Made by a program: the position numbers and the translations under genes | Shown: positions 774-42,435 of the stretch, one piece after another | How the letters are laid out: each line of letters opens with the position of its first letter | Numbering within the stretch: position 1 is the stretch's first letter | Notes under the pieces: model-generated | The model's input: the letters and a program-made list of their open reading frames with translations, nothing else | Databases searched by the model: none | What the model was told of the DNA's origin: nothing | NCBI RefSeq assembly: GCF_037042905.1 | Contig: NC_087251.1 | Span: forward strand, 1,798,001-1,862,000 | Length of the DNA stretch: 64,000 nt | Source of the DNA: Lytechinus pictus | Lineage: Eukaryota | Reading direction: 5' to 3'

Positions 774-975
774 ATGTATATACATCCCTCTTGGAGGTTC
801 TAGAAGAGGTATTATATGGCAGATCATGGCTTCAATCTGTTGCTTCTCATTTGTCTGCTTCTGGCATGGTGCTGATGAACATCTTATCTACTGGGCTTTA
901 TTCAACTGTGTTGGACTCCAGACTGAAGTTCTGATTGGCAAACTTGCTCATTGGACTTGTCTCAATAATATGCTG
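774..975 (+). CDS. HHAT: Hedgehog acyltransferase-like MBOAT, internal coding exon
   Basis: Acceptor tttag|A at 773/774 and donor CTG|gtaag at 975/976. Peptide CIYIPLGGSRRG...FVCFWHGADEHLIYWALFNCVGL matches the HHAT YIPxGGS/WHG region and keeps the MBOAT catalytic His. Upstream exons lie outside the window. Confidence 0.88.
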
Positions 976-1668: not shown

Positions 1669-1813
1669 CTTAAGTACTTGTCAGGTGGAATGTATAGAAG
1701 ACTGATAGCTATACTCCTCACTCCTAACTACATGTGCCTTGCTCTATCTAACCTGATCTTCCTTTGTGGGAACAGAACATCTTACTCATATTATGATCTT
1801 CTTGTAAGGCAAG
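1669..1813 (+). CDS. HHAT: HHAT penultimate coding exon
   Basis: ttttag|CTT acceptor (phase 0, matches the previous donor) and CAAG|gtaag donor (phase 1). Encodes LKYLSGGMYRRLIAILLTPNYMCLALSNLIFLCG..., like the HHAT SNLxFLGG segment. Confidence 0.82.
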
Positions 1814-2498
1814 GTAAGTGTTCAAATCTTCCTCATCATCATACAGTATTCTTTGGGTGATATGCTGATAATTAAACCTGGTTATCCCCAGAGTTTTAGT
1901 CCACACTTTGATTGAATGCAGGGTGTTTTCTCAATTAATTTGGTATTCATGACTAAGGTAATGTACCAAATAATTTTAATAACATTCATTATAAACTCAT
2001 ATTAACACATTCTTTTCATTTCATGACACAATTGGTTGCTTTGGGTAACTTTTTGACACAGAATTCAAGTAATCTTTACTTGGTGAATGAGTTGACAAGT
2101 GGCACTCCAACAAAGTATGATCTAAGATACCTAGGGTTAACTAAACCATGGCTATAAGAATACCACCCTGTTTTTGTTTGGGTGGTTTTGTTTGTTTTCA
2201 TAGGTTGATTGTATTATTCTGTTGTTTTGATTTGTTAATTTTATTGTTTTTCTTTCTTTCTGCTCATGATAAAATTCTTCATATTGACAAACATCTATAA
2301 TATACAAGCTCATAACTTGTATATAATTAGCTTCCTTTCAAACAAATCTACCATCCAAATAATGAATCTTTTGCATAAGTATAAAAGATTGTTGGTGGAA
2401 ATGTAGAAAGAGGTTTGCATTTAGAATGTATGAACAAATGAAAACATTAGAGTTGGTTGATCAGTTGTCTCGCGAAGCAGTTGAAACTGTAAGAGAGT

Positions 2499-2539
2499 TC
2501 ACAACGTTTCGTTGGCTGCTGCTCAACTTTGTCAAGTGA
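2499..2539 (-). ncRNA. Second hammerhead copy in the 3' pLTR
   Basis: Reverse complement of the 5015-5055 motif, identical except for a GUU rather than GUC cleavage triplet. Confidence 0.72.
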
Positions 2540-5014
2540 TAGAGACTTCGGTGCGAGGGCGAAGGTTATAGCGAGTATGCCGACGTCAGAGGGATCCGGC
2601 CGAAAGTAAGGGAGGTTGCTGTACGTCGGTGGTGTGTCGAGATGCGGATGTGGGTGACGGCTCGGTGTTGGTGTTGCCGGCGGTGGTTGTTGTTGGTCGG
2701 TTGAGGGCGTTCTTCTGCTGTGGTGTCGTCTGATGCATCGCATCCATGATTCGGCGATCTCGAAGCCTACGTCTCGATTGAGTGTGTTAGAGTGTAGTCG
2801 AATCTGGATGGCTTCCTTCACACGTCTGGTATGCCACTGCTGTGCAGAGTCGATGCATCTGACGCCAGACCAATCGGGTTGGTGTTGTTGTTCCCATGCA
2901 TGTTCTGCTACTGCCGAAAGTACGGTGTTTCACTGCTTAACGTCTCTCTGATGTTCGGTTAGCCTTTCCTTTACTGGTCTGCCTGTCTCTCCGATGTATG
3001 AGAAGTTGCAGCCCTTGCATGGTATCTGGTAAACAACACCGGCTTTCCTGTGAGTTGGTACTGGATCTTTGGCTCTGACGAGTTGGTTCCTAAGAGTGGT
3101 GTCCGACTTGGAAGACAGCGCGGATGTTGAGTTTCTCCAGTTGTCGTCGCAGCTGATGAGCTATGGAGGAGACATAGGGCAGAACTATTGTTGAAGTGAA
3201 CTGCTTCTCCTCTAAGATGATCCGCTCCTTAGATTTGAGTGACTTCTTGATGAAAGCCTTGGGGTAACCATTCAGAGCTAGTGCCGACTGGAGATGGCGC
3301 TGTTCTGGTGACAAATCCGATGGTTGAGAGACGATTCTATTTGCCCTGTCGTAGAGGCATTTGATTAAACAGCGTTTGACAGCGTGTGGGTGGTGGGAGT
3401 CATAGCGTAGATACTGGTCTGTGTGAGTGGGTTTCCTGTAGACAGTTGTCTTGAGGGTGCCGTCTGTCTGCCTGTGTACCTCGGTGTCTATGAAGGCTAA
3501 CAATCCGTTGGTTTCATGTTCGGCGGTAAACCTGATGGTGGTTTCCCTTCCGTTCATGAAGTCCAAGAGATCCTTTGATCTGTGCTTGTTGACGGTGATG
3601 AAGGTGTCGTCGACATAACGTTTCCAGATCTTAGGCTTGAGTTTTGGCGGGCAATCGTTGAGGGCAGTATTCTCAATACCTTCCATATACATGTTGGCGA
3701 TGACGGCTGATACGGGGCTACCCATGGCGGCGCCCTCTGTCTGTTCGTAGAACTTGCCGTCGTATAGGAAGTAAGAAGACTTTAGGACAAATTCTAGAAG
3801 AGTGGTTATTTCTTCTGGTGTCAGGCTGGTCCTTGCGGCAAGCTTGGGGTCTGCTATGAAGCAATCGCGGGCGACTCTGCATGCTCCTTCAATCAGGACG
3901 TTCGTGAATAGAGACTCCACATCGAATGAGATCATTGCGTCGTCATCTTGTATCGATTGTGTGGCGACAAAGTCTGTGGAATTCCGGACGGTGTGTGGTG
4001 AACCCCCGGTGAGAGGAGTGAGGATGTTGGCTAAAAACTTGGATAATTCATAGGCGAAAGAGCCGATGCAGGATACGATGGGGTGTAGCGGGACGGCTGG
4101 TTTGTGTATTTTGGGCAAACCGTAGATCCTTGGTGGTTGTTTCCGTTTGGGTCGGAGCTTTTGGTAGGTGTTTTCATCTAGGCTTCCTTTCTTTTTTAGT
4201 TCCGATAGTGAAGATGTTAACTTCCTTTCTAGGGAGTCAGTAGGATCTTCCTTGATTTCTTTGTATGGGCCAGTGGAGAGGAGGTTGTCCATCTTGTCCC
4301 TGTAGGTGGTGGTGTCTAGAATTACGGCTGCTCTTCCTTTGTCGGCGGGTAAGATCATAATGGTAGAATATTCCTTCAAGGACTTGAGAGCTGCTTCCAT
4401 ATCTTTGGTTATGTTAGATTTCGGTGGTTTAGCTTGCGCTAAGACAGAGCCGATATCATTGCGTAGCGATTCTCTGTCCTCTGGTGTCAATTGGCTTATG
4501 TGTGACTCTACTCTGGCAACGATTTCTGCTGCTGGTATCCGCTTAGGGACAGTGGCAAAGGTCATACCTCTGATGAGCAGAGTCTTCTCGGTGTCTGAGA
4601 GGTTCCTGGAAGACATGTTGATCACCCAGTTGTTGTTGGTGATGTTGTTCGTCTTGGAAGCAGGTTCGAGTAATTCGTTGAACTTCTGTTGTTGCCTCTC
4701 TTTGCATTTACTGAAGATGTCATGGTAGACGGCGTCATGTGTCTGGAAGACAGCCTCGGAGTCTTGAGAAGAGAGTGTGGTTCGAATTTCCTTAGTGGTG
4801 GAAATGACTTCCTTTCTGGCTTCATCCTTGATAAGACGGGTAAGAAAAATTCTTTCCCAGAGAAACCGTAGAGATGCGTTGTCTGCTGCTCTCCTTGCTC
4901 CCCTGGTGTGGACCGGAGATTTGATTCTTAGATCCTTGGGGATAACAGCTGCTTTGATGCATCGTGTGAGAAAGGAGAGGTGGTTGCTAAACCGTGTAAG
5001 AGTTGAAGTCTCCA

Positions 5015-5055
5015 TCACTTGACAAAGTTGAGCAGCAGCCAACGAAACGTCGTGA
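5015..5055 (+). ncRNA. Minimal type I hammerhead ribozyme (U3-A8 variant) in the inverted pLTR
   Basis: TCAC-TTGACAA-A-GTTG-agcagcagc-CAAC-GAAA-CGTC-GTGA. Stem I is TCAC/GTGA, the core UUGACAA is a C3U/G8A covariant of CUGANGA, stem II is GTTG/CAAC, stem III is palindromic ACGT, and the cleavage triplet is GUC. PLE termini are known to carry such minimal hammerheads. Confidence 0.78.
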
Positions 5056-5243
5056 AATCTCTTACAGTTTCAACCGCTTCGCGAGACAACTGATCAACCA
5101 ACTCTATTGAATTCTCCGCGATGATGTACATCTTCAGAAATGAAAACATGTTATAAACTTGGGTTAATTATAGAAGAAATTAAAGATTGATCAAATAACT
5201 TGATCTATATTGTTTACAATATATTTTCTCTTTTTATTTGCAG

Positions 5244-5368
5244 ACTGGCCCAATAACTGCCTTGCTACATTCTTTACTTTCTACTGCACCATCCAACTCA
5301 TCATGACCATCAATAGAAAGTATGGTAAAGACTTCATGTGCAACAAGTTCTATTATCGCTCATGGTAA
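5244..5368 (+). CDS. HHAT: HHAT last coding exon
   Basis: Polypyrimidine tract plus ttgcag|AC acceptor in phase 1 gives (D)WPNNCLATFFTFYCTIQLIMTINRKYGKDFMCNKFYYRSW-stop, resembling the HHAT C-terminal WP...YC helix. Confidence 0.78.
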
Positions 5369-42216: not shown

Positions 42217-42288
42217 TGTCTCTGCCGGGAATCGAACCCGGGCCCCCGGCTTGGAACGCCAGTGCCTTAACCACTAGTACACAGAGAC
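42217..42288 (-). tRNA. tRNA-Gly(TCC)-like cloverleaf (probably SINE head or pseudo-tRNA)
   Basis: Acceptor GTCTCTG/CAGAGAC (7 of 7), anticodon arm CTGGC-GTTCCAA-GCCGG, T arm CCGGG-TTCGATT-CCCGG, and A box TAGTGG. The D stem pairs poorly. Confidence 0.5.
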
Positions 42289-42393: not shown

Positions 42394-42435
42394 ACTCCTG
42401 AAGAAGACAGAGGGAGGACCGTCGAAAATTCGAGT
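42394..42435 (+). ncRNA. Minimal hammerhead ribozyme (canonical core)
   Basis: ACTC-CTGAAGA-A-GAC-agagggaggacc-GTC-GAAA-ATTC-GAGT. Stem I is ACTC/GAGT, stem II is GAC/GTC, stem III is palindromic AATT, and the triplet is UUC. An A-rich AATAAA-containing tail follows, as at PLE ends. Confidence 0.78.

What the first reader, a model, noticed from the sequence alone, without database searches (positions are those of the whole stretch)
5015..5055. Hammerhead ribozyme on the HHAT sense strand, ~190 nt upstream of the last exon
Seen: the PLE is antisense to HHAT, but its inverted 5' pLTR puts a complete minimal hammerhead (UUGACAA core with the U3-A8 covariation, GAAAC, GUC triplet) on the + strand. 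That places it in the HHAT pre-mRNA just before the terminal-exon acceptor at 5243. Established: PLE termini carry minimal hammerheads that usually cleave weakly as monomers and better as dimers through palindromic stem III. Inference: co-transcriptional cleavage could truncate or down-tune the Hedgehog-palmitoylating enzyme from this allele.
Basis: partly seen in the sequence, partly recalled or inferred. Interest (0 to 1): 0.7.

Follow-up and report, generated by a model that had tools for sequence, protein, structure and literature searches.

The report
Penelope retroelement hammerhead in HHAT intron
The 41-base motif is a real but ordinary minimal hammerhead ribozyme carried by a broken Penelope-like jumping gene in the last intron of the HHAT gene. 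It is unlikely to cut the HHAT message, which is spliced normally across that intron.

Summary
Observation confirmed. Window 5015-5055 (+) has every published hallmark of a metazoan Penelope-like-element (PLE) minimal hammerhead: a UUGACAA core with U3-A8, an extra A after A9, G10.1-C11.1, GAAA, a palindromic ACGU helix III, GUC, and a 4-bp helix I. A descriptor built from these hallmarks hits only this site and its twin at 2499-2539 (-), and nothing in 300 random 64-kb sequences. A covariance model finds at least 143 relatives in this genome, with compensatory changes in stems I and II (0 of 500 shuffles reach the observed covariation) and C3-G8/U3-A8 co-variation.

The host element is a 5'-truncated, frame-broken PLE at 2448-5137, flanked by a 12-bp target-site duplication. 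Its 5' end carries an inverted 133-nt terminal fragment. It lies antisense in the 3430-nt last intron of an HHAT orthologue.

The functional inference is not supported. Only one copy lies on the pre-mRNA strand, and no partner was found in the window or the 20 kb upstream. Published minimal hammerheads show no monomer cleavage. The motif can be locked in a 110-bp duplex with the other arm (-181 versus -8 kcal/mol). RNA contigs show exact GT..AG splicing into the terminal exon.

The scan's notes list other PLE hammerheads in this genome. This is a new member of a known kind, of low interest.

The parts
5015..5055 (+). Minimal type-I hammerhead (min-HHR) on the HHAT sense strand. Helix I 5015-18/5052-55; core UUGACAA 5019-25; extra A 5026; helix II 5027-30/5040-43 (+5032-33/5038-39); GAAA 5044-47; palindrome ACGU 5047-50; C17 5051. 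Predicted cut 5051|5052.
   Evidence: Sequence; descriptor hit with 0 hits in 300 random windows; CM R1 63.9 bits; features match PMC4209133.
2499..2539 (-). Twin min-HHR in the element's own sense orientation, in the 3' terminal repeat. It differs by GUU instead of GUC at the cleavage triplet.
   Evidence: CM R1 64.3 bits.
5005..5137 (+). Inverted 5' fragment of the PLE: the last ~105 nt of the terminal repeat plus a ~30-nt 'tail' ending ...ATCTTCAG. This fragment places the hammerhead on the + strand.
   Evidence: Inverted repeat 2440-2549 / 5005-5114, 94% complementary. BLAST to other copies runs to about 5139-5141, into the target-site duplication. The other copies' contigs diverge at 5134-5139 (table 7).
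2448..5004 (-). Main body of the PLE copy. It is 5'-truncated by ~95 nt relative to a tandem copy elsewhere (L009) and ends at ...CAACCAACTCTAA.
   Evidence: BLAST to L009/L010 at 91-92% identity; alignment of 30 terminal repeats.
3093..5004 (-). Reverse-transcriptase reading frame (YGLPKIHK motif). The listed ORF 3090-5042 runs 38 nt into the inverted fragment, so its apparent ATG (5015-5013) is not the native start.
   Evidence: Pfam RVT_1 30.8 bits, E 3.1e-7.
2933..3070 (-). GIY-YIG endonuclease remnant. It is in a different frame from the RT ORF and is interrupted by a TGA at 2932-2930, so this copy is defective.
   Evidence: Translation; Pfam GIY-YIG E 8.3e-4, 20.1 bits for the half-domain.
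2436..2447 (.). Target-site duplication, left copy (AAATGAAAACAT).
   Evidence: Read directly; identical 12-mer at both ends of the insertion.
5138..5149 (.). Target-site duplication, right copy (AAATGAAAACAT).
   Evidence: Read directly.
774..975 (+). HHAT exon encoding the catalytic-His region (..FWHGAD..).
   Evidence: phmmer hit to human HHAT residues 347-422, E 9e-11, with no other PDB family hit; Pfam MBOAT 241-333; splice joint 975|1669 in 4 runs.
1669..1813 (+). Penultimate HHAT coding exon.
   Evidence: Weak hit to human HHAT 417-459, E 0.1; joints 975|1669 and 1813|5244, GT..AG.
1814..5243 (+). Last HHAT intron, 3430 nt. It would be ~728 nt without the insertion and one TSD copy.
   Evidence: Joint 'skips 3430, GT..AG' in contigs of X1, X2, X15 and X5.
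5244..5368 (+). Coding part of the terminal HHAT exon (stop TAA 5366-5368). The exon continues as 3'UTR beyond 5600.
   Evidence: Phase-compatible with exon 1669-1813. X1's 2344-nt contig covers 5242-5600 with 0 mismatches.

Best explanation
A 2.69-kb defective Penelope-like retroelement inserted, antisense, into the last intron of an HHAT orthologue. Like many PLE insertions it has a 5'-truncated body preceded by a short inverted copy of its own 3' terminal repeat.

That repeat encodes the family's minimal type-I hammerhead. This is a U3-A8 core variant with a bulged A before helix II and a helix III reduced to the palindrome ACGU. In the element's life cycle the hammerhead is thought to process tandem or read-through PLE transcripts, as a dimer or with help from the PLE protein.

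The copy at 5015-5055 is that ribozyme motif, placed on the HHAT sense strand as a by-product of the inverted fragment. In HHAT pre-mRNA it is a lone monomer that cannot form helix III. It competes with a 110-bp duplex to the upstream arm and is removed with the intron, so it most likely has no measurable effect on HHAT.

Shown here: the motif, its family-wide covariation, the element's anatomy, the target-site duplication, the HHAT exons and normal splicing. Inferred: the ribozyme's native role and its inactivity in this context.
For: - **Motif and chance.** Searches show 2 hits in the window and 0 in 300 random 64-kb sequences.
- **Genome-wide family.** 143 of 150 scored candidates match CM R1.
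- **Covariation.** In 65 distinct sequences 93.4% of cells are paired. There are 39 double-sided changes against 7.1 in shuffles (0/500), and slid controls collapse.
- **Helix II variants.** GUUG/CAAC, GACG/CGUC, GAGU/ACUC, GUGU/ACAC and GUCC/GGAC all occur.
- **Core and helix III.** Positions 3+8 read UA 50 times, CG 2 and mismatched 3. Positions 15.2-16.2 are self-complementary in 49 of 55. RNAalifold recovers helix II independently.
- **PLE identity.** RVT_1, a GIY-YIG remnant, an inverted terminal repeat, at least 36 terminal-repeat matches and tandem copies.
- **HHAT and splicing.**
- **Against activity here.** There is no second sense-strand motif in the window or the 20 kb upstream. The monomer MFE pairs G5-A6-C7 with G16.2-U16.1-C17 and has z = -1.0. 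The arm-arm duplex is -181 kcal/mol against -8.2 for the hammerhead fold.
- **Literature on weak activity.** Monomer cleavage is nil, dimer cleavage is low, one PLE hammerhead needs protein, and no RNA-seq ends were found (PMC4209133, PMC6765202, PMC11167929).
Against: - No cleavage assay exists for this sequence.
- The RNA data are assembled contigs, which cannot show RNA ends or levels, so a partial reduction of HHAT output is not excluded.
- The spliced mRNA could come from an insertion-free allele if the sampled animals are heterozygous. There is no evidence either way.
- PLE transcripts carrying the same ACGU palindrome are present in the RNA runs and could in principle pair in trans.
- PLE protein, if expressed from other copies, might assist folding.
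- Helix I support is modest: 4 bp with few compensatory cells, and RNAalifold does not predict it.
- The descriptor was written after seeing the motif, although from published criteria.
- A2 was aligned to the model, so its pair counts lean towards the structure.
Confidence: 0.78

Rival explanations
1. One reading: the sense-strand hammerhead cleaves nascent HHAT pre-mRNA about 190 nt before the terminal exon, truncating or down-tuning HHAT from this allele.
For: The motif is complete and lies on the pre-mRNA strand inside the last intron. Its catalytic core is under family-wide constraint. Intronic sense hammerheads that cleave are known in amniotes (HH9/HH10; background knowledge). A bioRxiv study reports that hammerhead-bearing retrozymes are depleted from Xenopus introns (10.64898/2026.07.22.740005).
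Against: - It is a lone monomer with no helix III, and no cis partner was found.
- Monomeric min-HHRs show no detectable cleavage, and even dimers are slow (PMC4209133, PMC6765202).
- A 110-bp competing duplex with the upstream arm is available.
- Exact splicing into the terminal exon is seen in all four runs.
- In Xenopus, 42-44% of retrozymes are intronic anyway.
Confidence: 0.06
2. In HHAT pre-mRNA the relevant structure is not the ribozyme. It is the 110-bp inverted-repeat duplex (2440-2549 with 5005-5114), which loops out the 2.45-kb element body. This could mask the hammerhead, shorten the effective intron, and make a substrate for dsRNA editing or small-RNA pathways.
For: The arms are 94% complementary. 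The predicted duplex is -181 kcal/mol, against -33 and -16 for the arms alone. Both arms lie in one intron of one transcript.
Against: There is no direct evidence that the duplex forms in vivo. The A>G differences seen at 2541 and other positions are explained by paralogous copies, not editing. Co-transcriptional local folding and fast splicing may pre-empt long-range pairing.
Confidence: 0.12
3. The conserved motif in PLE terminal repeats serves mainly as a protein-binding or reverse-transcription recognition structure, and RNA cleavage is incidental.
For: For the Anolis PLE, hammerhead catalytic mutants did not affect in vitro insertion. Cleavage needed the PLE protein, and no RNA-seq ends were found at the cut site (PMC11167929). 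RNA contigs here read through the motif uncut (X2 record 18).
Against: Conservation extends to catalytic-core positions. It includes 3-8 co-variation (UA 50, CG 2) and a self-complementary 15.2-16.2 in 49 of 55 sequences, features that matter for catalysis and dimerisation. Fungal and plant PLE hammerheads cleave well (PMC4209133).
Confidence: 0.12
4. Chance resemblance: a few short conserved boxes in a relaxed pattern, with no RNA function.
For: Rfam finds no hammerhead, even at E<=10. The monomer fold is not unusually stable (z = -1.0).
Against: There are 0 descriptor hits in 300 random windows. The motif sits in the PLE terminal repeat, exactly where such motifs are documented. Covariation across several sequence families in the genome is strong. 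Rfam also misses canonical-core relatives.
Confidence: 0.02

Closest known systems
Metazoan PLE minimal hammerheads (min-HHR), including the Schistosoma Cercyon U3-A8 variant (Cervera & de la Pena 2014, PMC4209133)
   Same: Location in PLE terminal repeats. Type-I topology with an open 4-5 bp helix I. An unpaired nucleotide between A9 and G10.1. G10.1-C11.1. Helix III reduced to a palindrome. The U3-A8 core covariant. Copies also found close together on opposite strands.
   Different: Helix II here is short (4 bp, a bulged A, then 2 bp) rather than the 7-8 bp of the schistosome families. It comes from a different host genome and a different PLE family. No activity data exist for this family.
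Poseidon (PAc) hammerhead of Anolis carolinensis (PMC11167929)
   Same: A PLE-borne hammerhead near the pLTR/ORF junction. It is weak or inactive alone. The 'tail' signature at insertion ends is also seen here, as the ~30-nt ...ATCTTCAG extension.
   Different: PAc has a C3-G8 core and overlaps the ORF start codon. Here the motif lies ~70 nt upstream of the tail that holds the likely ATG. Protein assistance was not tested here.
Intronic hammerheads of amniotes (Rfam HH9, HH10) and the discontinuous Clec2 3'UTR hammerhead
   Same: A hammerhead on the sense strand of a protein-coding gene's transcript, with potential to cut pre-mRNA.
   Different: Those are full-size ribozymes with a stable helix III and loop-loop tertiary contacts. 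They are active as monomers and conserved at orthologous positions. This one is a TE-borne minimal monomer with no helix III and no Rfam score.
Non-LTR retrozymes and satellite hammerheads (newt, Schistosoma Sm-alpha, Xenopus)
   Same: Type-I hammerheads with a short palindromic helix III that need tandem copies to dimerise. A preprint argues they derive from PLE pLTRs (10.64898/2026.07.22.740005).
   Different: Those occur as tandem arrays giving circular RNAs. Here a single copy sits beside an inverted partner, not a tandem one.

Membership tests
PLE minimal hammerhead (min-HHR, PMC4209133) | Catalytic boxes CUGANGA (or the U3-A8 covariant), GAAA and UH in type-I order | tested here: met
   UUGACAA ... 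GAAA ... GUC at 5019-5051.
PLE minimal hammerhead (min-HHR, PMC4209133) | [quoted passage not shown] | tested here: met
   A5026. An A is present in 55 of 55 distinct 41-nt relatives (model-biased).
PLE minimal hammerhead (min-HHR, PMC4209133) | G10.1-C11.1 closing pair of helix II | tested here: met
   G5027-C5043. GC in 60 of 65 distinct sequences.
PLE minimal hammerhead (min-HHR, PMC4209133) | Palindromic 15.2-16.2 (helix III formed only in a dimer) | tested here: met
   C5048-G5049, giving ACGU. Self-complementary in 49 of 55 relatives, against 25% by chance.
PLE minimal hammerhead (min-HHR, PMC4209133) | Consensus families in one genome with compensatory changes in the helices | tested here: met
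   39 double-sided changes against 7.1 in shuffles, 0/500; at least 5 helix II variants.
PLE minimal hammerhead (min-HHR, PMC4209133) | Resides in the terminal repeat of an RT + GIY-YIG element | tested here: met
PLE minimal hammerhead (min-HHR, PMC4209133) | Self-cleavage 3' of position 17 (as a dimer) | not testable with these tools
   Only contigs were available, and they show no RNA ends.
Rfam hammerhead families (Hammerhead_1, HH9, HH10, II, 3) | Score at or above the family gathering threshold | tested here: not met
   No hammerhead hit at gathering or at E<=10. Canonical-core relatives are also missed.
Rfam hammerhead families (Hammerhead_1, HH9, HH10, II, 3) | Stable helix III and closed loops 1 and 2 for tertiary contacts | tested here: not met
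   No helix III in the monomer, and helix I is an open 4-bp stem.
Penelope-like element | Reverse transcriptase domain | tested here: met
   Pfam RVT_1 30.8 bits, above the 29.6 cut-off.
Penelope-like element | C-terminal GIY-YIG endonuclease | tested here: inconclusive
   The half-domain before an internal stop scores 20.1 bits against a 22.6 cut-off, E 8.3e-4. The motif ..YQIPCKGCNFSYIGETGR.. is visible.
Penelope-like element | Terminal repeats from tandem units, with frequent 5' truncation and an inverted 5' fragment | tested here: met
   Tandem copies about 2.66 kb apart. Inverted pairs at five loci, including this one.
HHAT (MBOAT family) | Best similarity to HHAT across the catalytic-His region, with transcribed and spliced exons | tested here: met
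   Only HHAT chains are hit, E 9e-11, residues 347-422 with WHG kept. Spliced contigs. HHAT versus HHATL was not separated beyond the retained His.
Host-regulating intronic ribozyme | Cleavage of the host pre-mRNA, or conservation at the orthologous site | not tested
   No raw reads and no orthologous genomic sequence were available. The related organism B shows only spliced mRNA.

The most novel reading that the evidence does not exclude
The lone sense-strand min-HHR becomes active only when PLEs are expressed. Activation would come either by pairing its ACGU helix III in trans with abundant PLE transcripts or through PLE-protein-assisted folding, as reported for the Anolis element. HHAT (Hedgehog palmitoylation) output from this allele would then be coupled to retroelement activity. 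When PLEs are silent, the 110-bp inverted-repeat duplex would act as the off-state.
Probability: 0.04. Interest if true: 0.6.

Novelty: new member of a known kind. Interest (0 to 1): 0.2.

Why it matters
The result mainly serves annotation. It shows that this genome carries hundreds or more U3-A8 minimal hammerheads that Rfam models miss. It also supplies a small, covariation-supported model for finding them.

For HHAT it argues that a ribozyme-bearing insertion on the sense strand of an intron is tolerated. This fits the view that minimal PLE hammerheads are inert as monomers. If cleavage were nevertheless shown, this would be a natural case of a transposon-borne ribozyme modulating a developmental-signalling enzyme. 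Present evidence makes that unlikely.

Tried and rejected
- **Rfam scans.** Gathering threshold on the whole window and E<=10 on 4900-5150 gave no hammerhead. I rejected this as evidence against the motif after a control: five genome relatives, two with C3-G8 cores, one of them (L095) the canonical CUGAUGA, also gave nothing.
- **Terminal-exon peptide against PDB.** No hit. The exon assignment rests on reading-frame phase and the RNA joints instead.
- **Young-family alignment.** Copies are 80-97% identical. Their stem I changes break pairs rather than compensate, so I widened the search with a covariance model.
- **RNAalifold.** It recovers helix II only. Helix I support comes from the pair counts alone.
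- **RNAcofold of two copies.** It predicts a domain-swapped extended duplex rather than the textbook dimer. I did not use it as evidence either way.
- **The 'opposite strands' joint 2499 to 5063.** I considered it as a possible rearranged RNA and rejected that. The contigs carry 7 mismatches and come from other copies, and the aligner switches between the two equivalent arms.
- **A>G differences near 2541.** I considered editing and rejected it, because other copies carry that base.
- **The ATG at 5015-5013.** I rejected it as the native PLE start. It lies in the inverted fragment, and tandem copies continue about 95 nt further upstream.
- **Lunse et al. 2016/17 (PMC5785218).** Not held in the library, so it is cited only through the review PMC6765202.

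Full report
**1. What is in the sequence**

The + strand at 5015-5055 reads UCAC-UUGACAA-A-GUUG-(A-GC-AGCA-GC)-CAAC-GAAA-CG-UC-GUGA. In hammerhead numbering:
- Helix I is 4 bp, 5015-18 with 5052-55.
- The core is U3 U4 G5 A6 C7 A8 A9 (5019-25), followed by one unpaired A (5026).
- Helix II is closed by G10.1-C11.1 (5027/5043).
- G12 A13 A14 A15.1 occupy 5044-47, C15.2 and G16.2 occupy 5048-49, U16.1 is 5050 and C17 is 5051.
- The predicted scissile bond is 5051|5052.
- A15.1-C-G-U16.1 is the self-complementary tetramer ACGU, so helix III can only form between two copies.

It omits only the extra A.

**2. Is it more than chance?**

Rfam gives no hammerhead at gathering score on the whole window, nor at E<=10 on 4900-5150. 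This negative carries no weight. Five relatives from the same genome, including two with C3-G8 cores (one the canonical CUGAUGA), are also missed at E<=10.

I wrote a descriptor from the criteria that Cervera & de la Pena (PMC4209133) list for metazoan PLE minimal hammerheads. The criteria are the catalytic boxes with a C3-G8 or U3-A8 pair, 0-1 nucleotide before helix II, G10.1-C11.1, a palindromic 15.2-16.2, and helices of at least 4 bp.
- It hits exactly two places in 64 kb on both strands: 5015-5055 (+) and 2499-2539 (-).
- It hits nothing in 300 first-order-Markov random windows.
- A laxer version hits 0.023 times per random window.

**3. Family evidence**

The 110-nt repeat holding the motif gives at least 36 matches in the 812-Mb assembly at 80-100% identity. 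Within this young family the motif is almost invariant, and the few stem I changes break pairs. That says little, so I looked wider.

One locus held a second, unrelated-looking motif with the same architecture. I built a covariance model from four sequences and searched the assembly. Of 150 scored candidates, 143 matched, out of a very large first-look pool. I fetched 60 lower-scoring places and aligned 79 matches, of which 65 were distinct.

| Measure | Result |
|---|---|
| Helix II variants | GUUG/CAAC, GACG/CGUC, GAGU/ACUC, GUGU/ACAC, GUCC/GGAC |
| Helix I variants | UCAC/GUGA, UCAC/GUGG, UUGC/GCAA |
| Cells forming a standard pair | 93.4% |
| Cells changed on both sides | 39, against 7.1 in shuffles (0/500 reach it) |
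| Slid controls | paired cells drop to 10-67%, covariation score from 0.31 to at most 0.04 |
| Positions 3 and 8 | UA 50, CG 2, mismatched 3 |
| 15.2-16.2 self-complementary | 49 of 55 (AU 35, GC 8, CG 6), against 25% by chance |

RNAalifold independently recovers helix II with compensatory pairs, but not the weak helix I.

There are caveats. A2 was aligned to the model, the sequences are related by descent, and the model favours the extra A. Even so, the pattern is what the 2014 paper describes as the signature that these motifs are not random.

**4. The element**

- **Coding content.** The minus strand carries a 650-codon ORF (3090-5042) with Pfam RVT_1 and the YGLPKIHK motif. Downstream, in another frame and with an internal TGA, lies a GIY-YIG remnant. 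The copy is therefore a defective Penelope-like element.
- **Inverted repeat.** Its last ~110 nt (2549 to 2440 on the minus strand) are repeated, inverted, at 5005-5114 with 94% complementarity.
- **Inverted fragment.** Comparison with other copies shows it runs to 5137. It includes a ~30-nt tail (...ATCTTCAG) that in tandem copies is the start of the next unit.
- **Truncation.** The body starts about 95 nt short of that unit start. The apparent ATG at 5015-5013 lies in the inverted fragment and is not the native start.
- **Single insertion.** The whole composite (2448-5137) is flanked by a perfect 12-bp duplication, AAATGAAAACAT, at 2436-2447 and 5138-5149. It is one insertion event.
- **A family habit.** The same head-to-head architecture recurs at four other loci of the family. 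The 2014 paper also notes min-HHR pairs on opposite strands.

**5. The host gene**

- A + strand exon at 774-975 matches human HHAT residues 347-422 (E 9e-11). Only HHAT chains are hit, and the WHG histidine is kept. The same exon matches Pfam MBOAT.
- The next exon (1669-1813) weakly matches HHAT 417-459.
- The terminal coding exon (5244-5368) is phase-compatible but too short and divergent to hit on its own.
- Assembled contigs from four public runs join 975|1669 and 1813|5244 with GT..AG ends. One 2344-nt contig (X1, depth 50.7) covers all three exons with no mismatch. The runs are labelled only 'RNA?', but spliced contigs show that they hold RNA.
- The last intron is therefore 1814-5243, 3430 nt, and would be about 728 nt without the insertion.

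**6. Does it act on HHAT?**

Several lines say probably not.
- **(a) No helix III as a monomer.** The literature reports no detectable cleavage for single min-HHRs and low activity for dimers and trimers, mostly at non-physiological Mg2+ (PMC4209133). A review concludes that they do not cleave as monomers and are slow even as dimers (PMC6765202). The Anolis Poseidon hammerhead cut only in the presence of its protein, and no RNA-seq reads began or ended at its site (PMC11167929).
- **(b) No partner on the same strand.** The descriptor and the model find no second sense-strand copy in the window or in the 20 kb upstream. The best score there is 15.3 bits, against 30-64 bits for true members. The twin copy is on the other strand, so the pre-mRNA carries its complement.
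- **(c) A competing duplex.** That complement can pair with the motif's arm. The predicted duplex is -181 kcal/mol, against -8.2 for the hammerhead fold. The monomer MFE (-9.5, z = -1.0) ties up G5-A6-C7 with G16.2-U16.1-C17.
- **(d) Normal splicing.** Spliced mRNA using the terminal exon is present.

Limits remain. Contigs cannot show RNA ends or amounts. I cannot tell whether the sampled animals also carry an empty allele. A contig in X15 bridges the left junction (2262-2488, 0 mismatches), so the insertion is present in that sample. Trans pairing with PLE transcripts, or protein assistance, cannot be excluded.

**7. Comparison with what is known, and verdict**

This is a member of the published class of metazoan PLE minimal hammerheads. 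It belongs to the U3-A8 sub-variant first seen in schistosome Cercyon elements. All sequence-level defining features were tested and met. Catalysis could not be tested. It is not a member of the Rfam hammerhead families by score. It also lacks the stable helix III and loop contacts of the intronic HH9/HH10 ribozymes that do act on host transcripts.

Intronic copies of hammerhead-bearing repeats are common: 42-44% of Xenopus retrozymes are intronic, although they are reported as depleted relative to intergenic DNA.

- **Novelty:** a new member of a known kind.
- **Interest:** low (0.2). The residual interest lies in the small chance (about 4-6%) that the motif is conditionally active on HHAT, and in the inverted-repeat duplex as a possible dsRNA source.

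Earlier notes of this scan mention other PLE hammerheads in the same genome. They agree with the picture of an abundant family but were not used as evidence.

Noticed in passing
window 42394-42435 (+), next to the tRNA match at 42217-42288 (-): Another min-HHR-like motif, with a C3-G8 core (CUGAAGA), an extra A, a 3-bp helix II closing stem and an AU palindrome. Only the relaxed descriptor finds it, and model R1 scores it weakly (16.4 bits, E 0.25). Rfam reports no hammerhead there. The neighbouring tRNA scores 48.8 bits.
   Followed up: partly
L003:1260-1440 (G000:C13 about 16967107-16967287): A near-perfect palindrome made of two head-to-head ends of a different PLE hammerhead family (UUGAUAA core, helix II GACGG/UCGUC, AU palindrome), flanked on both sides by (AT)n microsatellites. 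This family is the commonest min-HHR type among the model's hits.
   Followed up: partly
L020, L021, L027, L028 (G000:C8, 17.5-17.8 Mb): Four copies of the same terminal repeat carry a 5-nt insertion (CGTCG) between GAAA and the cleavage triplet, which alters the helix III region. Two of them also lack 16 nt further downstream. They look like a locally duplicated sub-family.
   Followed up: no
window 2070-2172 (+), inside the HHAT last intron: A short stretch with very high summed contig depth in all four runs, and many contigs that diverge on both sides (tables 2, 7, 8). It is probably a fragment of another abundant, transcribed interspersed repeat.
   Followed up: no
window 2600-4400, run X5 (organism B): A related organism holds contigs 90-95% identical to the PLE body at high depth, and HHAT exons about 98% identical (6 differences in 347 nt) with the same splice joints. 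The PLE family is therefore shared by, and probably transcribed or abundant in, a close relative.
   Followed up: no
window 2499-2577 and 5063 onward, runs X1, X2 and X15: Contigs from other copies of the element (7 mismatches; one is 2406 nt long) run straight through the hammerhead. RNA or DNA with an uncut motif is therefore present in these runs. The aligner reports them as an 'opposite strands' joint because the two arms are equivalent.
   Followed up: partly
window 3090-5042 (-): The mechanical ORF gains an apparent start (ATG 5015-5013, or TTG 5042) from the reverse complement of the hammerhead's helix I region in the inverted fragment. Most copies have ..CCAT.. there, so inverted fragments of this family routinely supply a spurious ATG to truncated bodies.
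   Followed up: partly
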